64,000 nt of DNA from Basidiobolus meristosporus CBS 931.73 (lineage: Eukaryota; Fungi; Basidiobolomycota). Shown one piece after another: positions 15,224 to 26,917 of the stretch (position 1 is the stretch's first letter; every line of letters begins with the position of its first letter). The notes below the pieces were generated by a model, which did no database searches, was not told the origin of the DNA, and was given only the letters and a program-made list of their open reading frames with translations. The stretch is taken from positions 1-64,000 of the forward strand of contig MCFE01000078.1 of the NCBI GenBank assembly GCA_002104905.1. The letters are read 5' to 3'. The position numbers and the translations under genes are program-made.

Positions 15224-16822
15224 ATGTCGTTCATCTTACATCACCAGAGAGTCCTCCGAAAGTCTGCGGGTCCTCTACGGCTCTACAAACGTGTGTGTAC
15301 CCGCACACTGAGTAGCCGGTCTTTGCCTTCACTCTCCTCGCAGCAGCATTCGCAGCGTACCTTCTCTATGTATACATCTTCGCCACGCCGAGCACCTAAA
15401 TATCCAAACGAGCACCAACCAGAAAACAGTGCAGATACAAACTGGTGGATATATCTCCTAGGAGTGAGTTTGTTAGGAGGACTCGGGTGGGCCTATCAAC
15501 ATCACTTCAAGTATCACCATAATCCCACCCAGCCGGAGACTAGAGAGGAAGAGGAAGAAGATGGGCTCCTTCCCTCCGCCTCCATTAACAAGAAGCTGAG
15601 GAAACATGAAAAAACCGTCCTGACCAAGTCCTCGAAGATTCCCAGATTTGACACGAACCAATTGGCCTCGAATTCTCCTATCGAGGATTATCACACTGAG
15701 CTATCCAACGACTCCAAAGATGCATGGTATTTCGGTGTGTTCGATGGTCATGCCGGAAAGTATTGCGCCCAGAGGTTGGCTAATCAACTGGTCCAACAAG
15801 TGCGCGACAATGTCGAGAAAATGGAGGCCAGTAAAGATCAGGAGTTACCTGAGCAGATTGGCCAAACCATTGTTAAAACCTTTGAAAATCTCGATCGAGA
15901 GATCGTCTGGGGCTCCCTGGGTGAAATCATAGTAAACACTGAAAAGGCCGTCCAAGTAAGTATACCTGCAGCTATCTCTGGGAGCTGCGCGATCATTGGA
16001 TATATAGATACAAAAACCATGGACCTATACGTGGCTAACACAGGTGATTCACGGGCACTGATCGGCACCTTGGGCAACGATGGTAAGTGGAGCTCGGTGG
16101 AAATGAGCAATGACCAAAATACCACCAATAGCAAAGAGAGAGAGAGGCTGTATAGCGAGCACCCCGGCGAAGAAAAGACAGTGATATCCAAAGGGAGAGT
16201 TCTGGGATCTTTAGGTGAGGCTTTGGTTGGATATTACGCACCATGTAGGCCCGTTGCTAATCAATCATTGTTCCCACCTAGCCCCGACCCGTACATTTGG
16301 TATGAGCGTTTTCTGTCGCTTTACACTGCTAGGGAAAGCGTGCTGATGCACATTTATCTAGGCGACTCGCGATACAAATGGAGCACCCGTACCCAACTAG
16401 CAATCCGGGATAACTTCTTCCCAAGAATGCGCATCCCACCTCCACACTATTCGACACCACCATACGTCACCGCAACACCTGAGGTTAGACACCGACGACT
16501 TAATCCGCAAGATAAATTTATGGTGGTGGCAAGTGATGGGCTATTTGACATGTTGAGTAATGACGAGATAGTGTCTCTGATTGGAACCTATCTGCATGAT
16601 CGCAATCCCAAGCTTCCTGACAATGACCCCAATAGCCAGCCCGCCAAGAACAACAATTGGGCGTACATAGATGATAATGCAGCTACTCATCTGATCCGTA
16701 ATGCACTTGGTGGTAAGTCAAGGAAGGAGTTGAGCAAAATGCTGTCTGTCGAGGCGCCACACTCTAGAAGTTTGCGCGATGACATCACCGTGACAGTGAT
16801 ATTTTTCGAGGATTCAGTGTAA
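15224..16822 (+). CDS. PTC5: Mitochondrial PP2C-family pyruvate dehydrogenase phosphatase (Ptc5/PDP-like), 3 exons
   Basis: Arg/Ser-rich presequence, QLASNSPIED, FGVFDGHAG, LYVANTGDSRA, HPGE..VI..GRVLG, YVTATPEV, VASDGLFD, NAATHLIRNALGG, RDDITVTVIFF. Introns 16215-16281 and 16300-16361 flank an 18-nt exon that restores LAPTRTFGDSRYKW. ATG at 15224 is preferred over the non-ATG ORF start. Confidence 0.92.
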   Translation: MSFILHHQRVLRKSAGPLRLYKRVCTRTLSSRSLPSLSSQQHSQRTFSMYTSSPRRAPKYPNEHQPENSADTNWWIYLLGVSLLGGLGWAYQHHFKYHHNPTQPETREEEEEDGLLPSASINKKLRKHEKTVLTKSSKIPRFDTNQLASNSPIEDYHTELSNDSKDAWYFGVFDGHAGKYCAQRLANQLVQQVRDNVEKMEASKDQELPEQIGQTIVKTFENLDREIVWGSLGEIIVNTEKAVQVSIPAAISGSCAIIGYIDTKTMDLYVANTGDSRALIGTLGNDGKWSSVEMSNDQNTTNSKERERLYSEHPGEEKTVISKGRVLGSLGEALVGYYAPCRPVANQSLFPPSPDPYIWYERFLSLYTARESVLMHIYLGDSRYKWSTRTQLAIRDNFFPRMRIPPPHYSTPPYVTATPEVRHRRLNPQDKFMVVASDGLFDMLSNDEIVSLIGTYLHDRNPKLPDNDPNSQPAKNNNWAYIDDNAATHLIRNALGGKSRKELSKMLSVEAPHSRSLRDDITVTVIFFEDSV

Positions 16823-17554
16823 ATACTTGCCCTGTTAAACAAAGTCCAGTCGAACCATCAACCCCATAAAGGACCGAAGAACCGAGCTACACTCTATACC
16901 AGCGACTCTGATACTTCACTCGCATACCATTATTTAACAACAACCAAGTGAAGCTATCAGGTAATTCAAATTATACAATAACCTCAGCCTATAGGGAGAA
17001 AGTAAACCTCTCACGAACTCCACCTACACCCCCAAGATTTATAAAAGCCAAGTAGGGCGGGATATAGCTGCCTAACAACACCCATCATTTCGATGAACTA
17101 GAGCAGTTGAAGTGGTCACAAGAATGAGATGTATGTTATTTGAGATCAAGAGCGATAGCTCAGGTGCTGTTGAGGTGAGAAGCGATATCGGTACAGCTTA
17201 CTTGGCATTTCTATAGTTGAGAATCCACTGCATATCACTGGCCAAGTCCGGGTGGGTGTGCTAAAATAGTTGGCAAAATACAAGATCCTTGCGAAGGTGT
17301 ACATGCTGGCTCAATCTTCATTGAACCTACTTTGTTTATTGCATTCAGATAGGGCTGATACGCCATTACTGGCGTAACACCTGAATGAACATGATTATCA
17401 AAAGATGTTACAAGGTCCTGTTATGGATGTTTGAGAAATGTGTGTTGATATGCGAATTCGACAGTGTGAGCTTGCATAATATGTTGGGTTGTACAAATAT
17501 GTGATTTTCGTGACATCATTAAACAATTTCCGGAAATTCATCGGTCAAATGCGT

Positions 17555-18338
17555 TTACATGAACCTTCGGCCACGTAATAATTGCTTCTCACGGATTATC
17601 TCCAGTACATGGGACATTCCTTTACGGCTCTGGGAAAACCGTTAGAATGGAAGGAAACAACTCAGCTAGAGAAAATATGGCTCACCTTGACTGTGTTGTC
17701 GGCAAACTTCTTCACTCCAAATCCCTCCAATTTACCAGTTAGGCCCCAGCCAAAGTTCGAGATAATTCGCGCCTCGGTGGTTACTTGGGTCCTGAACATG
17801 AACATGGATATGATAAATTCAAGCACCAGACTGACCATAACTATCTCCAAACAATACCCACCACTGAGCCTGCTCCGGGTGAGGCCTGAATGTTTGTGTC
17901 TCTTCGATTTGCATTATGCGAGTGTGGTTGAGATTTTTGGTACGGGTGACCATGGAATTGTTGTGAGGATTGATGACAGATTCTTCAATAATAAAAGCCT
18001 GGTTATTTTTCATGATCTATTATTGCCGAAACTATTAGCGTTAGTCTCAAACAGAACGGTAAAGCCTCTGTACCTTAGTCCCCCACTTTGGAAGAACGCC
18101 TTTCTTCAAAAGGATACGGGTGGTGTGAAGGCATCCCTCTGAATCTACGTATCTGTCGAGAACATCCGCTCCCAGCACATGTGAAGCGAACGGATTGGGA
18201 TAACGAAGCCAGAAAGCTAGTGAGACATTTTCCCAAGGATGTCTTGAACAAAGAGCATTTGAATTACCACGTCTAGAAAGTAAAGCCCTTACAAACCACT
18301 TACTCATAAGAGAAGGTATTTTGATAAATTTTAACCAT
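17555..18338 (-). CDS. UPS1: PRELI/Ups1-like mitochondrial intermembrane lipid-transfer protein, 5 exons
   Basis: Spliced product: MVKIYQNTFSYE-HPWENVSLAFWLRYPNPFASHVL..D VLDR..LHTTRILLKKGVLPKW ... EESVINP..MVTRTKNLNHTRIMQIEE ... GWGLTGKLEGFGVKKF..N..KSRKGM..VL. Confidence 0.9.
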
Positions 18339-20165
18339 ATAAAAGTATGCCCGGAAACAAGGGAATTCGGCCAATGATAGGATGATACGGGGATTTCGCT
18401 TCCAGTTGAGAGAAACGCGCAGACTTCAATTATGTGAAGAAACGACCAAGAACGCAAGGATAACGCAATAAATGGTTGAGGAAGCTGGGGAAATAGAGTT
18501 GCAAACCACTTGGCGAGGCCCTCGACGCGGAAAAAAAACAGAATTCCCCCGAAATAAGTCGATCGAAGTCTGGAGGCATGAAGTCAGACTGAATGGTTCA
18601 TGTGAATTTTGGAATGAGACATGGAATAAAGGTATCGGATTAATAGTACCAGAATCAAGCAGTCTCGACAAGAATCTAGCCCGCATGAATGCTCTTTACC
18701 GTCAGCATCCAACCCATATAGATAATTACAACCAACAAATCTATGGATTTTAATCGAGCTTTTCGCTGGCATTCATCGGGGCCCCGTATTTGATGGTCAG
18801 GTGCAAGGCCCTGGATTGTACATATTCATGCTAGGAATATCGATCCACATCTGCAATGCTAAATCGCTAGAATGGTCCAAATCAAAATTAGCCCAACTTC
18901 GGTCTAGTGCTCCGCACCATGGAAAAACACAGTACCAAACAGTCCAAGAGGAGTGTGAAGGATTCATGTATGGGATAGCCTCTTTTATTGATGCTTTCTG
19001 GATTGGATAGTCTACCTGCTTTCCCCTTTTAAGCCGTCCTCGAAATCGCTCCGTGTAAGATAGGAGTTCTCGAATCCAATGGGCTACTGCGACTGATTGG
19101 CCAAGATTAATCCAGCAAAGATTTTGCATCATGCGCCAACTCTTGAAAGCCATGTTAAAGGTGGCCCCGAACATAGTTTTCCGCCTGTGATATGATATGG
19201 CTACCCCATCTCATCAGCTGAATGGGGAACATAGTCACTTGTTTTGCAATAGCTACAGAATCCGCAAATTCCGCTCTCAATGGCGAGTGAATCACACAAG
19301 TAGATGGTAAGCAAATGATGCTGGCATCTATGATATGCCAAGCACAATCGAATGATATTGATCTGTTTCTCTTTAAAGGGTGCAGGCACGAAAGTAGCTA
19401 GACAATGCATGAATTCAGGTATGTGACTTTACTGGCACTGTTCACATACGCTTGCGTTCTACGGTAGTGCATAGTGTTTTCACAAGCTCAACTGCAGCTC
19501 TGGCGTATTGCACTCTAGTATGAACGGAGGTATAAAGTATAGATGCCCGCTCGAGTGTGGAAATTACCAAGTAAAGCAAACTACTACTTTAAGATAATGA
19601 TCAGCGACATGAGTGTTGACAGGGTGACCACCAGACGGCGTGATAGTTTATAAGATTCAAACTGGCCAAGGTGCAAATTTCCGTTGGCAACCAGCGCATG
19701 ATAGCCGTTATTGCCTTGCATAGATTAACTTCGTTGCGGTACTACTGACATCACATCAGAAATGGTAAGGTGACATGTATGACATCATTAATTTACAGCG
19801 ATGCTGCAACCTTGTAGTGAAGTTTCTATACATTATTATGAGGCAATTTGTCATTTGATAGAGAATAATTATGCTGCATTATCAATGAAAGCGCTGTTCA
19901 TCTTGTGTCCAATCACAAATGCTGCAAGAATTAAAGTTGTAAACTGTATACAAATCAGCCACCCCTTCACAATGACACCCTATTTCATCTCCATCCTCTA
20001 GCCACACCACCTATAACTCAGCTCCCCGCCTCAACCTGCCCACTGTTTCTGAACTTTCTCTAATTCACCGCAGCTGTACTACACCACTAGTCCTATTAAT
20101 TCGTGACTTTTCTTCTCCCCTGCTCTGCCCCTTATCGCCCGTGTATTTAGTTCACCTACTTCAGA

Positions 20166-21051
<886 letters not shown>

Positions 21052-24034
21052 TCTAGAATATATTCCCCAACCCCTTTCATGATTCATGTCGCCAGCGGGT
21101 TAAGATAGCATACTACAAGGCAGCCAACAAATTTGATTTTCTTTGTATCGTAGATACCATTACACACCTCGTAATATATGAAATTAACTTAATCTCCCTC
21201 ATGTGCTTGAAGTTGTATAAGGACAGCTACACAATAGAGTATTATTTCCAAAGCTGGAAACATCCTAAATTTCGCAGATCCAAATTAGTCAACGAAGCCA
21301 ACCACCGCACATGGCTCGGCAAATAGAAATGAGAGAATTCGCCAGCGCACTCAATTCACCTCGGGTGTCTAAGAATATAAATTCTACACGATTTGAGATC
21401 TGCGAGGTGTCTTCTGGTGAAGGCCCCAGTTCGGGATCAGCAAATTGGGATCAAAACCCGACCTGTTGAAGAATAAGCCGTACCGCTGAAAATAAACGAA
21501 TACACAAACGCAGTAGACAGAGGGCCGAGGTTGGCCAGCCAGTCACACTCTCCGTAAAAATATGCGGATGATTTGAACAAGCGCCCTCTCGGTATTTTTT
21601 AGAACTGGAGGATACAAAACCATTTGGCGTTTTTTCTGATTGGCAGAAGTGCTGGGCAGGTCAAGATAAACGACAGGTCTAACCCGATACTGGTGTGTCT
21701 CTGCCAAGAGGATTAGCTGAAGGAGCAATGTGAATGCGAAGGGCCATACAATAGGCTTCTGAATGGAAATCACGCTCGTCAGACTCATCACCATTTGTTT
21801 ACAATAATACTCCGATTAATTTCTGGCCATTGCTTGCAAAGATACCTCACGTTCCATTTGACATGTGACTCTCCAATAAGTAGTTCGTTCAGGAGTGTGG
21901 GTCATTTCCCGAAGTCGCCACACAAATTGGATTATTGATGAAATCTCTATTCACCAATTGTGTTGATAGATCATATCTGGTTGTTTACCAAACGATTCGT
22001 AATTAAGTTTTGATGGAAAATATTCTCATTCGTTGGCTTAATAAATGAAATATTCTTCTGGAAAACCGGTTCAAATGAAATATCACATGAATCAGATAGG
22101 CGCGGATTGTCAGATTGGATTGATAGACTCCATCGTGAATGTGCTAGCCCAGTCTGCTAGCGAAGCAGGACACGGGTTAGGCCACCGCCCTCATGTCAGC
22201 GACAGCCGATTCACGCTCAGATACTTTGAGCAGTGGTTGACGGTGCGTCATCCAGGTGGAATCCTTCGATCTAACAGTGTGCACTTCGGGATATGCCAAC
22301 TATGAGGTCAGGATGATGAAGATTATTAGTCCCTGCGATATTTTAGGAAGAAGCATCGAACAAATGCAGCTTGACTCTATGACTTGGTTGAATATGGAAA
22401 GTTTGACCATGGCCAATTTTGAAATGCTGGGTAGCTTTGCGCTCCAGAAGCCACCCTTGAGCCGATTCTAGATTGGGATCATGTAACACCCATCCGAAAA
22501 ACTAAGATTAATTGCATGCAAAATAGGTCACCGGCTTACAACGTAGCTAGTCCAGAATCGGCTTAGATTGTATGAGTGATAACAGCATTGATTGTTTCCA
22601 GCAATATTCAGGCTATTATAAGCACCCCAATACGATCATTTTTACCAAATGCTGTAATTAAGTTACGCTTTTAGCATGAAGATAACGCTGTCGAATATGC
22701 TAAACGATACATTCCGCTTACACAAGAGTGATTGGATGCACAATCTAAAGGGTGAATACTGTCTAGTACATCTAAATATACTTGACCCCCTCCTATGTCA
22801 AAAATAAATATAGCTCAGTATATATTAGTAGTCGCACGAAATATACCTAGAAATGATTACATATCCGGATCTACATGGGTAGGGTGCCAATCTACTCAAG
22901 CCACCTTCGTTAATTTTGGCAATAGAGCTATGGAAATTTGGCACTGATGATTGGGAAGAAGCATAAGGAAGGTAGATGCTCTGACCTGAATATCGCTCCT
23001 GACGCTCGTCCACGGCGATTGGCATCATTCCAGGTTCTCTAGTCACCGTCACTTGAAAAGGTAGTTGTCGGGATTCAATCTGAATGACCCCCGGGCGAAT
23101 CAATTATTTACATTTACTTTCCAATAAACTTGGCTTTGAAGGTGCTTCATTTTCCTATTTGTTAGACGGGAGAGTAGCACGTTTGTTGATTACTCGGATT
23201 TTACTTGGTAGATTCCGTGTATACGAGCCACAAGTAGCCCATTTGAAACCTGAACACTGTCGAGTGGTTTTGCAGCTACCTGAGGCGAGGCCTTGAGCAT
23301 CATCATCGACTATGCGGATACGACACAGGTGCCTTTGGTTGCCTATCATGTGTGCCACCTGCCATTTCTCGCCCGCGTCAAGGACTCTGGCATTACGGTG
23401 AGCATCAGATATATTTGGGTCGATGTAGCATCCACTGGTCAAAATGGTGCAAAGCTCTATTGGGGACGGATTCTCCAGCCGCGGGGCCTGGCAACGGAAA
23501 CTTGTCTTTGGTACATCATTTTCCCATAAATTCATGCTCAATAGAATCAATACCAGCGGATCAGAGGTCAGGATCCTTCTGATACTCTAATGGTAGATCC
23601 GCACCATGTTCTTCAATCCGTAGACCATGGTCAGATTGATAATTCTGAGGGCAGAAGTGACTTTTTTCCCAAATCAAGGGAATGACCAGTATTAAAAAAT
23701 CAGTCTGTCCTGTCCTAATGGGTAAGTGATTGGCTCAATCTTCCAAAAGAAAACACGTAAATGGTTGGCGTAGCATACATGATTAAACTTATCCGAGTAA
23801 GCCTATACAGGTACAAAAAAAAACTTCTATGGATTCGATTCGAGACTGTGACAACCTCTGAATACTTAATTGGATTGAAAGTGATTTTTAGATGATGGCT
23901 TTCGATCTTCCTGATTTATAAAGAAGTCGATTGCCTCTAGAGCGGAATAATTCCCTGATCATTGAGATACATCAGATCATCTTTCAATTCACAGTGCGGA
24001 AAGATTCCTGTGAAGAAGCGAGTGTTCATTTTCG

Positions 24035-24945
24035 ATGTTATTGAGTACTGGCGAAAAGCCAGGTCGGGGAATATGGAAGCCTCCCGAGACGAAAAGATTG
24101 ATAGAAGTACGAAGAGAGCTTGACGACCTTTTCTTTTACACGAAAAAGAGAATAGTTGACGAGCAGTGGCAAAAGGTGGCGGAGCGTCTACAAGCCTCTG
24201 GCTTCAATAGAACCATGTTGGAATGTAAAATAAAATGGAAAAATCTACTTCAAAAGTTCAAGGTATGGCCCCTGACCATTTCACGAGAGTTTTAGGCTCC
24301 ACTTAGAGATGACTGGACTCGAAGAATCGGACCTGCTTTAACCGCGACTTCTTCTAGGAAACGCTTCAACCTGGATATAACGGCCCGTCATTTCCCTTCA
24401 GCGAAGACATGCAATGGTACGCAGCAAGATTATCCAGGGAAGGCAAGGAAGAGAGCTCAGAAACCCCAACCAGGGAGGGGAAAAGGCAGTCTCCGCCAGC
24501 CGGTGAAAGCTCACACACCTCTCATGATGCTCGCGCATCACTTCCTCTAATTGAATCTCGCAACGTATCTTCCCCTCGTGCTGCTCATAAGCTTTCCACT
24601 CCTCTTACACCGCAGGGAATAAGTGAGCCTCCACATGGGGATGCCAATCTGAAAAGTATACACTCAGCATACATGCCTACAAACGCATCCTATCAGGATA
24701 CTGCCGGATCGATGGATCCGCTGCCAGTTGAGCCCTCGGCAATCCATTATTCTAACCAGCCATCCGGATCAAGATCACCCCCGTTTCACGGCCACCAATA
24801 TCCAACCGTTTCTTCGCCCATTCCGATGTCTAAACGGCTTAAACCTACAAGATTCGAAGAGGTTTGTATATTTCAATCGTTTTTCTATTCATTTCCATGA
24901 ACTCCCCATTTTGATATATAGATCTTATTTAAAGTACACACGTAA
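24035..24945 (+). CDS. Trihelix / Myb-SANT-like DNA-binding protein; may instead be the 5' half of a fusion with the downstream GS-like gene
   Basis: WKPPETKRLIEVRRELD..F..KKR..EQWQKVAERLQASGFNRTMLECKIKWKNLLQKFK | ETLQ..FPFSEDM matches the trihelix pattern. Intron 24263-24357. Ser/Pro-rich exon 2 ends at a donor after 24861 (KRLKPTRFEE). The stand-alone model ends ILFKVHT* at 24945. Confidence 0.8.
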
Positions 24946-25140
24946 TGCTCCATATTGTTGCTTTACGCCCTTTATCATGACAAATATTCCACCAACGAGT
25001 ATGATACTTGTAGTTGGAGTTCGGATTAGCATGATTGTCACCAGATGAATCTGCGAGTCTCACTTCTATTCTTGATCTGAATTCATCACATACTCTGCTA
25101 CCTCATCACTCTAACCACGCCACATATTTCTATTTTTCAG

Positions 25141-26917
25141 TTCGAGCCACTTCTATCCTCTGTTCGTTATGACCCGCTGGAGGTGCAAAGGATGAACGAG
25201 ATCCTCAAAAACGATGAGCGCGTTAAAGTGGCAGGCATCGATATAGACGGCGTGCTACGGGAAAAGATCATGGTGAAAGCCAAGTTCTTGTCGATGCTTT
25301 ATGATGGCTTTGGTAGGAGCACACATACTGTGAAGCACGAGTTTAGAACTAACTCTGTCCTACAGGCTTCAGTGGTACTATCTTCGGTTGGGGCGAAAGG
25401 GAGGCATCTTCGCTGGGGTCGGAGTTTGAAGGTTGGTCCATCGTTTTGCCTAGTAAGTAATTCCTCAAACTTAGTCCATTAAAGCATACAGCTACCTCGT
25501 TGCGAAGGTGGATCTCGGTACCTTCCGAAGGATCCCGTGGGAAGAGAATCTTCCTTTCTTCCTAGTGAAATTTTTCACCAAGGAGGGTCAGCCAGTGAGC
25601 GTGTGTCCACGTCACATCCTAGGGAGGATCATTCATGAGTATCACTCGATGGGATTTGAGCCTTTGTGTGGTGTGAAGTACGAGTGGTACAACTATAAAG
25701 GTAAATTTTATCTACCCCCGAGGCCAAGTATTGCCTTCTTACACCCTCGGAAACCATCCTTGAATAGAAACGCCGTACACTTTACGAGAAAAGAATTTTA
25801 AAACCGAGCCGCTAACTTCGGATCTGTTCAATTTGGCATTGGATGATTTTCAGGGGAAAAGAGCGTATTTCAACGAATTGTTTCAGATGCTTCAGAAGTT
25901 CGACTGCCCACTAGAAAGCCTTTGTAGCGAAGTTGGTAAGCTATAAATGACGTATGTCTAGTGCGAAGTAGTGGTTCTGATTGGCCTCTCTATCCGCATT
26001 TGCTTGCTGCATCAGGTCCAGGTCTTTACCAAGGGGCACTTCATTATGGCTCCGCGCTAACAATGGGAGATCGCGCGCAACTGTTTAAGGTTGCAGTGAA
26101 GCAAATAGGGCTGCGCCAGGGCATCATGGCCTCATTCATGGCTAAGCCACATATGAGCATACCAGGATGCTCCGCACGTTTGCATTTCTCCTTGAAAGAT
26201 ATTCGGTCAGGCAAAAATATTTTCTCCAGGCGGAACGAGGTTGGAATACGAGAGCCACCAAGAGACGGTTTGGAGGATATGAGCCAGGTGATGAGTTGGT
26301 TTGTTGCTGGGTTGCTGAGAGGACTGCCCAGTATTTTGGCCATTCTGGCGCCGTATGTGAATAGGTAAGCACTCCGGATTTTCTGAGAGCAAATCGATGG
26401 TTTAGTAATCATTTCCTCAAGCTATAAGAGGTTAGGAGAGAATGAATGGTCGCCAATGATGGTTTCATGGGGGCACGAGAACAGAAATAGCGCCATTCGT
26501 ATCATCAGTTCACAAGCCGACGCTGAGTCTACTAGACTAGAAGTGGTGAGCAATGGTTTTCATGAGCATTATTTTCAATGGCCTAACAGGTTTTCGTAGC
26601 GGGTGTCCGGGGCTGATATGAATCCCCACTTGGCGCTTGCTGCTTTGCTGGCCTGTGGTATTTGGGGAATAAGAAACAAGCTTGCCATTCCGGTTCCTCC
26701 TAGCTCCGGAGTTATTGCCGGTGACTCGAGAGCCGAGAGATTTCCGAAATCGCTCTTGGAGGCAACGCAAAAAATGTTGGAGCCTGGAAGTGTGGCGCGA
26801 GAAGTACTTGGTGACGAATTTATAGATCATTACGGAAGCACACGACTCCATGAATGGAAACTGTGGGAACGAGCTATTACAGACTGGGAAACCAAACGGT
26901 ATTTCGAAATGGTGTGA
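25141..26917 (+). CDS. Glutamine-synthetase-like (GSI / gamma-glutamyl ligase family) protein with substituted metal ligands; 5' end uncertain
   Basis: VKVAGIDIDGVLREK, FGFSGTIFGW, DLGTFRRIPWE, CPR, GPG, ASFMAKP, APYVNSYKRL, WSPMMVSWGHENRNSAIRII, RLEVRVSGADMNPHLALAA, LGDEFIDHYGSTRLHEW..W..AITDWETKRYFE. Several introns; the frame is open upstream of ATG 25192 back to an acceptor at 25140. Confidence 0.9.

What the first reader, a model, noticed from the sequence alone, without database searches (positions are those of the whole stretch)
25261..26620. GS-like protein has lost half its metal ligands, two replaced by basic residues (pseudoenzyme or metal-independent site)
Seen, aligned by motif to Salmonella GS numbering: E129 is K (GVKYEW, AAG at 25676), E220 is Q (GPGLYQGAL, CAA at 26030) and H269 is R (PGCSARLHFS, CGT at 26177). 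E131, E212, E357 and the substrate/nucleotide Arg residues (YKRL, ENR, IR, EVR) are kept. The N-terminal GW-D..D and G-Y-x-D acidic positions and the RGK motif of related fungal GS-like proteins also differ (GWGERE, AYSY, LREK). The frame is otherwise intact, with no stops. Inference: Lys and Arg at the two n2 positions could mimic the missing cation charge, giving a ligand-binding but non-catalytic module maintained by selection.
Basis: partly seen in the sequence, partly recalled or inferred. Interest (0 to 1): 0.7.

Follow-up and report, generated by a model that had tools for sequence, protein, structure and literature searches.

The report
Disabled glutamine-synthetase domain on a DNA-binding protein
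In the fungus Basidiobolus, a glutamine-synthetase-type enzyme domain has lost three of its six metal-binding residues yet is kept under strong selection and sits in one gene with a Myb-type DNA-binding domain, so it probably now acts as a regulatory or ligand-binding module, not a normal enzyme.

Summary
The window is Basidiobolus meristosporus CBS 931.73, contig MCFE01000078.1. After splicing, the GS-like frame is intact.

- **Substitutions.** Aligned to E. coli GlnA and 119 relatives, E129 is K, E220 is Q and H269 is R. Family-invariant H210 (C), the residue aligned to D64 (Y), Y179 (L/T) and the N-domain acidic loop are also changed. The relatives are canonical at 118-119 of 119.
- **What is kept.** E131, E212, E357, H271, S273 and all five Arg (321, 339, 344, 355, 359).
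- **Conservation.** The same states occur in a syntenic paralogue and in B. ranarum. Synonymous sites are saturated but pN/pS is 0.08-0.11, and the K and R codons vary synonymously. This is not a pseudogene.
- **Origin.** The clade sits on a long stem (1.05 substitutions per site) inside a pan-fungal gamma-glutamyl-ligase-type family.
All three loci encode one 713-714 aa protein: a Myb_DNA-bind_4 domain, a Ser/Pro-rich linker and the GS-like domain. The public annotation splits the window's copy.

Loss of catalysis, charge mimicry by K and R, and a sensor role are inferences. The scan found this before on another piece of this genome.

The parts
24035..24262 (+). Exon 1: start codon and first 76 residues, the main part of the Myb/SANT-like (Myb_DNA-bind_4) DNA-binding domain
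   Evidence: Pfam PF13837 E=6.8e-14. Conserved in L002 and, unannotated, in L003:5602-5829.
24358..24861 (+). Exon 2: end of the Myb_DNA-bind_4 domain, the Ser/Pro-rich linker, and a conserved basic patch (SKRLKP)
   Evidence: In the paralogue P0158 the Pfam domain spans residues 13-95, across the exon 1/2 junction. Linker pN/pS is 0.24-0.31. The splice is in frame.
25141..25312 (+). Exon 3: 17 conserved codons (FEPLLSSVRYDPLEVQR) upstream of the annotated Met at 25192, then the start of the GS N-domain (VLREK instead of the family's RGK)
   Evidence: The annotated start Met of P0159 is V in L002 and I in L003, while the upstream codons are conserved. This supports one fused gene.
25366..25431 (+). 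Exon 4 (66 nt): remodelled acidic loop, GWGERE instead of the family's GWDxxD
   Evidence: A 66-nt exon is found in both L002 and L003. The public model runs on to 25452 with a 32-nt intron. The extra residues have pLDDT below 50.
25485..25700 (+). Exon 5: YSY (family-invariant Asp aligned to E. coli D64 is Tyr, TAC 25493-25495) and GVKYEW (E129 to K, AAG 25676-25678; E131 kept)
25768..25935 (+). Exon 6: remodelled Y179 loop (family GMFGYS reads DLFNLA here) and LCSEV (H210 to C, TGT 25923-25925; E212 kept, GAA 25929-25931)
26016..26364 (+). Exon 7: GPGLYQGAL (E220 to Q, CAA 26030-26032) and PGCSARLHFS (H269 to R, CGT 26177-26179; H271 and S273 kept)
   Evidence: Pfam Gln-synt_C E=5.6e-18 on this exon alone.
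26422..26545 (+). Exon 8: YKRL (R321), Trp at the E327 flap position, ENR (R339), IR (R344) and TRLEV (R355, E357)
26600..26917 (+). Exon 9: R359, the C-terminal helices and the stop codon
   Evidence: Pfam Gln-synt_C E=4e-20.

Best explanation
The window carries one gene of nine exons (24035-26917, + strand) for a 714-aa protein. It has an N-terminal Myb/SANT-like (trihelix-type) DNA-binding domain, a fast-evolving Ser/Pro-rich linker with a basic patch, and a complete two-domain GS type-I fold. The GS part is the Basidiobolus version of a pan-fungal gamma-glutamyl-ligase-type family (Trp at the E327 flap position, no D50). On the Basidiobolus stem the two-metal centre and the amine pocket were rebuilt. 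The n2 site lost E129 (to K) and H269 (to R), and the n1 site lost E220 (to Q). H210, the Asp aligned to D64, Y179 and the GWDxxD loop were also replaced. The glutamate- and ATP-contacting residues stayed. After that burst the new states were frozen by purifying selection. Inferred: the domain no longer runs the canonical two-metal ligation. It binds a small ligand (a nucleotide and/or a glutamate-like acid), with K and R taking the place of the n2 cation, and it couples that binding or its oligomeric state to the DNA-binding domain. That would make it a cis-fused sensor built from a retired enzyme.
For: - **Shown, residue mapping:**
- **Shown, family invariance:** 118-119 of 119 canonical at the changed ligands. 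5 of 28 fully invariant columns are changed, all in active-site motifs.
- **Shown, three copies:** the same states occur in the window, the L002 paralogue and B. ranarum L003.
- **Shown, selection:** pN/pS is 0.08-0.11 for the GS domain, 0.06-0.08 for Myb and 0.24-0.31 for the linker, with pS about 0.8. The K codon reads AAG/AAG/AAA and the R codon CGT/CGA/CGA.
- **Shown, tree:** stem of 1.05 against tips of 0.03-0.09, on a tree that otherwise follows fungal phylogeny.
- **Shown, fold:** AF2 pLDDT 86.4 and pTM 0.91, with TM 0.80-0.85 to solved GS and 1-naphthylamine GS.
- **Shown, fusion:** P0158 is annotated with PF13837 plus PF00120. Exon structure and in-frame junctions are conserved at three loci. 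The annotated Met of the split model is not conserved.
- **Shown, GGL signature and importance of these residues:** Table 3 and the alanine mutants in PMC6478659.
- **Inferred:** loss of catalysis, K/R charge mimicry, ligand sensing and nuclear action.
Against: - There is no biochemical data.
- Gln at position 220 can still ligate Mg, and E131, E212 and E357 remain, so a one-metal or metal-independent reaction is possible.
- The retained ATP and Glu contacts fit an active enzyme as well as a sensor.
The public annotation splits it into a 251-aa Myb gene and a 460-aa GS gene.
- DNA binding by the Myb domain is untested.
- GSI folds form large oligomers, which would be an unusual format for a transcription factor.
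- Only three sequences from two species support the selection analysis.
Confidence: 0.6

Rival explanations
1. It is still an active ATP-dependent ligase with altered chemistry. It would use one metal at n1 (E131, E212, Q220), with K and R replacing the n2 cation to hold the ATP phosphates. A remodelled amine pocket would give a new acceptor substrate. The Myb/SANT-like domain would tether the enzyme to chromatin or to a partner.
For: Every Glu- and ATP-contacting residue is kept: R321, R339, R344, R355, R359, H271, S273, E207, G127 and Y225. Selection is strong. The gamma-glutamyl ligase PA5508 structure shows only one Mg (PMC6478659). The amine-pocket changes are coordinated rather than random.
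Against: Three of six ligands that are invariant in 119 relatives are gone. Even the longest-branch relative, Tieghemiomyces, keeps them all. Alanine changes of several equivalent residues in FluG, including the E212, H269 and E357 equivalents, impair function. I know of no GS-family enzyme working without the n2 ligands, though that rests on my own knowledge.
Confidence: 0.22
2. It is a purely structural or oligomerising scaffold, lengsin-like. The GS fold would only multimerise the Myb domains and bind no small ligand.
For: GS type-I folds assemble into rings. A pseudo-GS with a structural role exists in the vertebrate lens (lengsin, from my own knowledge). The fold is confidently predicted.
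Against: A scaffold role would not need the full set of substrate-contacting Arg, His and Ser to be retained, nor the new K, Q and R to be fixed across synonymous saturation.
Confidence: 0.12
3. It is a decaying pseudogene, or the substitutions are an alignment or annotation artefact.
For: The public models disagree with each other (460, 620 and 714 aa), and one uses a doubtful 32-nt intron.
Against: The spliced frames are intact at three loci. pN/pS is about 0.1 with saturated dS. Independent alignments (MAFFT, and HMMER to PDB chains) give the same residue mapping.
Confidence: 0.02

Closest known systems
Pan-fungal GS type-I-like / gamma-glutamyl ligase family ('glutamine synthetase/guanido kinase', 'Type-1 glutamine synthetase 2'; e.g. 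Podila P0160, Neoconidiobolus P0190)
   Same: 44-53% identity over the full two-domain GS fold. It shares Trp at the E327 flap position, Pro at N264, lack of D50 and all the Arg contacts. The Basidiobolus clade nests within this family on the tree.
   Different: The family keeps E129, E220, H269, H210, Y179 and three acidic N-domain residues in 114-119 of 119 members. Basidiobolus has K, Q, R, C, L/T and G/S, E, Y. None of the 120 listed hits outside Basidiobolus carries a Myb domain, and a word search with the Myb region found no other protein of 393-1250 aa.
FluG C-terminal domain (Aspergillus nidulans) and bacterial gamma-glutamyl ligases (PA5508/4HPP, PuuA, GlnA3, 1-naphthylamine GS 8wwu)
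   Same: GSI fold with Trp in place of the flap Glu and no D50. FluG has a regulatory/developmental role. The best-rmsd structural matches include 8wwu.
   Different: FluG and the GGLs keep every metal ligand, and FluG mutants of several of them lose function. FluG is fused to an amidohydrolase, not to a DNA-binding domain.
Lengsin (vertebrate lens pseudo-glutamine synthetase)
   Same: A GSI-type fold kept by selection after loss of catalytic residues (my own knowledge, not tested here).
   Different: It is a different lineage and tissue role. It has no DNA-binding domain and, as I recall, a wider loss of substrate-binding residues.
Bacillus-type GS with GlnR/TnrA (feedback-inhibited GS controlling a DNA-binding protein; PDB 7tfa, 7tf6, 7tf9)
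   Same: A GS fold whose ligand state controls a transcription factor. These complexes are among the structural matches.
   Different: There the GS is a fully active enzyme acting in trans. Here the GS fold has a broken metal centre and is fused in cis to a Myb-type domain.

Membership tests
Glutamine synthetase superfamily (Pfam Gln-synt_C fold) | Significant match to PF00120 over the full catalytic domain, and a GS fold | tested here: met
   P0159 scores E=4.6e-73 over profile positions 2-344 of 344. The AF2 model has TM 0.80-0.85 to solved GS.
Catalytically competent GS / gamma-glutamyl ligase | Six metal ligands: E129, H269, E357 (n2) and E131, E212, E220 (n1) | tested here: not met
   Three of six are replaced (K, R, Q) in all three Basidiobolus copies. 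The family is canonical in 118-119 of 119.
Catalytically competent GS / gamma-glutamyl ligase | Glutamate- and ATP-contacting residues R321, R339, R344, R355, R359, H271, S273 | tested here: met
   All are kept.
True glutamine synthetase (GSI sensu stricto) | D50 and the E327 flap for ammonium handling; score above the TIGR00653 cut-off | tested here: not met
   Trp stands at 327 and there is no D50 equivalent. TIGR00653 scores 186 bits against a cut-off of 429.
Gamma-glutamyl ligase (GGL) type, pan-fungal clade | Trp at the flap position, plus the family-invariant amine-pocket residues (GWDxxD, GYxD, GMFGYS) | tested here: not met
   The Trp is present, but the pocket residues are replaced: G/S, E, Y, and DLFNLA. 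By descent it belongs to the clade. By active site it does not.
FluG | N-terminal amidohydrolase domain fused to the GS-like domain | tested here: not met
   The N-terminal part is Myb_DNA-bind_4 plus a linker, with no amidohydrolase hit.
Myb/SANT-like (trihelix-type) DNA-binding proteins | Myb_DNA-bind_4 domain above the Pfam threshold | tested here: met
   52.5 bits against a cut-off of 27 on window exon 1. Residues 13-95 in P0158.
Myb/SANT-like (trihelix-type) DNA-binding proteins | Sequence-specific DNA binding and nuclear localisation | not testable with these tools
   Needs EMSA, DAP-seq or microscopy.

The most novel reading that the evidence does not exclude
This is a eukaryotic one-component-style regulator. 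A GS-fold domain with its n2 metal replaced by a Lys/Arg pair would sense a nitrogen-status metabolite (glutamate, glutamine, 2-oxoglutarate or ATP/ADP) without turnover. It would directly gate a fused Myb-type DNA-binding domain, which is the cis equivalent of the Bacillus GS-GlnR/TnrA circuit.
Probability: 0.35. Interest if true: 0.75.

Novelty: new variant of a known kind. Interest (0 to 1): 0.55.

Why it matters
Pseudoenzymes derived from core nitrogen-metabolism enzymes are rare. One fused in cis to a DNA-binding domain in a eukaryote would give a directly testable case of an enzyme fold turned into a metabolite sensor. The Lys/Arg-for-metal replacement is a clean natural experiment on the GS two-metal centre. 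In practice, the three public models of this gene are named 'glutamine synthetase' or 'glutamate--ammonia ligase'. Two of them are mis-structured (split or truncated), so metabolic reconstructions of Basidiobolus would count a ligase that is probably not one.

Tried and rejected
- **RNA evidence.** I could not test the fusion junction (24862-25140) or the choice between the 32-nt and 53-nt intron with reads.
- **Joined model.** The joined 714-aa window protein has no reference, so it was never sent to a search or fold tool. Exons were searched by reference, and P0159, P0158 and P0001 stood in for the whole. The joined model was used only inside scripts, for alignment and pN/pS.
- **dN/dS.** Biopython NG86/YN00 failed or gave unstable values because dS is saturated. 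I replaced it with explicit pN and pS.
- **Other Myb-GS fusions.** A word search with the Myb region found only P0158 itself. Sensitivity is limited.
- **Canonical Basidiobolus member.** None appeared in the top 120 hits of two searches. This is weak negative evidence, not proof.
- **Literature.** Searches for GS pseudoenzymes or DBD-GS fusions returned nothing on this protein.
- **Model coordinates.** None were available, so I could not check whether K and R reach the n2 site.
- **Rejected readings.** Pseudogene, alignment artefact and FluG membership.

Full report
**What is at the coordinates**

The region is an intron-containing fungal gene. Reading three frames and applying GT..AG boundaries gave a 7-exon, 460-aa model for 25192-26917. 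That model is letter-for-letter the deposited protein P0159, 'glutamate--ammonia ligase' of Basidiobolus meristosporus CBS 931.73. It lies on contig MCFE01000078.1, whose coordinates equal the window's.

Pfam Gln-synt_C matches exons individually and the whole protein at E=4.6e-73.

**Are the changed positions the metal ligands?**

I fetched E. coli K-12 glnA (L001). I aligned it by MAFFT with the three Basidiobolus proteins and 119 family members found by searches. Mature E. coli numbering returned E, E, E, E, H, E at positions 129, 131, 212, 220, 269 and 357, which validates the register.

| Position | Basidiobolus | Family |
|---|---|---|
| E129 | K | E in 118/119 |
| E220 | Q | E in 119/119 |
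| H269 | R | H in 119/119 |

- Kept: E131, E212, E357, H271, S273, R321, R339, R344, R355, R359, E207, G127 and Y225.
- HMMER alignments to solved GS chains give the same pairing.
- Further family-invariant positions are also replaced: H210 to C, the Asp aligned to D64 to Y, G268 to A, the GMFGYS loop around Y179 to DLFNLA, GWDxxD to GW(G/S)ERE, and RGK to REK.
- Of 28 columns invariant in all 119 relatives, five are changed, and all five are in active-site motifs.
- Even the longest-branch relative, Tieghemiomyces, keeps every ligand.

**What family is it derived from?**

The relatives form a pan-fungal clade covering chytrids, Zoopagomycota, Kickxellomycotina, Glomeromycota, Mortierellomycota, Mucoromycota and Dikarya. 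They are 44-53% identical to the window protein. They have Trp at the E327 flap position and no D50. That is the signature of gamma-glutamyl ligases and FluG, not of true glutamine synthetases (PMC6478659). NCBIfam equivalog scores are far below cut-off.

On a maximum-likelihood tree the family follows fungal phylogeny. The three Basidiobolus sequences form one clade (support 100) on a stem of 1.05 substitutions per site. Comparable phylum-level stems are 0.27-0.48. The tips inside the clade are only 0.03-0.09. This is a burst of change followed by a freeze.

No canonical Basidiobolus member appeared among the top 120 hits of two searches. The clade therefore looks like the orthologue and not an extra copy, but that absence is weak evidence.

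**Selection**

I threaded P0158 and P0001 onto their loci (L002 and L003) and built the homologous window CDS in a script.

| Region | pN/pS |
|---|---|
| GS domain | 0.08-0.11 (pN 0.06-0.09) |
| Myb domain | 0.06-0.08 |
| Linker | 0.24-0.31 |

Synonymous sites are saturated, with pS about 0.8. The new residues are held through synonymous turnover. The K codon reads AAG/AAG/AAA, the R codon CGT/CGA/CGA, and the Y codon TAC/TAT/TAC. Neutral decay is refuted.

An earlier scan note on this stretch (s1-202253) suggested a trihelix fusion, and I tested it.

- Exon 24035-24262 matches Myb_DNA-bind_4 at 6.8e-14.
- It splices in frame to 24358-24861, which holds the end of the domain and a Ser/Pro-rich linker. 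That exon splices in frame to 25141.
- The paralogue P0158 (714 aa, L002) is annotated this way, with PF13837 at residues 13-95 and PF00120 at residues 363-710.
- B. ranarum has the same Myb exon, unannotated, at L003:5602-5829.
- All three loci share the eight-intron structure and the upstream synteny PP2C-PRELI-Ras.
- The public annotation splits the window's copy into a 251-aa Myb gene and the 460-aa GS gene. However, the GS model's start Met is V or I in the other two loci, and the 17 codons upstream of it are conserved.
- The public model's 32-nt intron adds seven residues that are absent from both relatives, which have a 66-nt exon there. Residues 62-66 within that insertion are modelled at pLDDT below 50.

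I therefore read the gene as nine exons encoding 714 aa.

**Fold**

An AF2 model of P0159 with a 39-sequence alignment has pLDDT 86.4 and pTM 0.91. Foldseek gives TM 0.80-0.85 to solved type-I GS. The lowest rmsd is to 1-naphthylamine GS, a gamma-glutamyl-arylamine ligase. The ESM Atlas model of P0158 agrees.

**Mechanism: what is shown and what is inferred**

- **Shown.** The n2 site has lost two of three ligands to basic residues. The n1 site has lost one to Gln. The amine pocket is rebuilt. The nucleotide and glutamate contacts are retained. The domain is fused to a Myb-type domain. All of this is under purifying selection.
- **Inferred.** The canonical two-metal ligation is lost. K and R neutralise E357 and contact an anionic ligand or phosphate. 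Ligand binding or oligomeric state modulates the DNA-binding domain.
- **Not excluded.** The retained contacts argue against a pure scaffold but fit an altered-chemistry ligase equally well. I cannot exclude that reading (0.22).

**Limits**

- Another follow-up on a different piece of this genome reports that the paralogue is transcribed (s1-202194). I did not verify this.
- The scan has found this feature before on other DNA of the same genome (s1-202371 and s1-202194).
- The joined window protein was not sent to any search tool. Exon references and deposited protein ids were used instead.
- No literature on this protein was found.

Noticed in passing
window 24035-24945 and 25432-25452: The public annotation splits the gene into a 251-aa Myb gene and a 460-aa GS gene. 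It also uses a 32-nt intron that adds seven residues absent from both relatives. The B. ranarum model (620 aa) omits the Myb exon.
   Followed up: yes
window 15764-21054 versus L002:1-3860 and L003:1-2560: The block PP2C-PRELI-Ras-MybGS is duplicated within B. meristosporus. Downstream genes differ: pseudouridine synthase in the window, GIDE/RPA_C in L002. On the tree L002 groups with B. ranarum (support 97), so the duplication predates that species split or reflects hybrid ancestry.
   Followed up: partly
P0002 (4424 aa) and P0019 (2757 aa), Candidatus Auribacterota: Giant bacterial proteins with six and three separate GS-like stretches, respectively, matched exon 7 (33% identity; E=2.2e-43 and 2.2e-18). 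Multi-GS-domain giants are unusual and unexplained.
   Followed up: no
ESM Atlas cluster, Candidatus Omnitrophota (structure row 3): In a bacterial cluster of GS catalytic-domain proteins of about 555 aa, 28% of members also carry an HTH_17 DNA-binding domain. This may be an independent DNA-binding plus GS-fold architecture.
   Followed up: no
P0231 (Aurantibacter) and P0334 (Olivibacter): Bacteroidota proteins are 43-52% identical to the fungal family over the full length. I used them as the outgroup. This hints at an old inter-domain transfer for the whole family.
   Followed up: no
window 24862-25140: The intron joining the linker to the GS part is 279 nt here, against 83 nt in L002 and 207 nt in L003. 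It is long for this genome, whose other introns in the gene are 53-95 nt.
   Followed up: no
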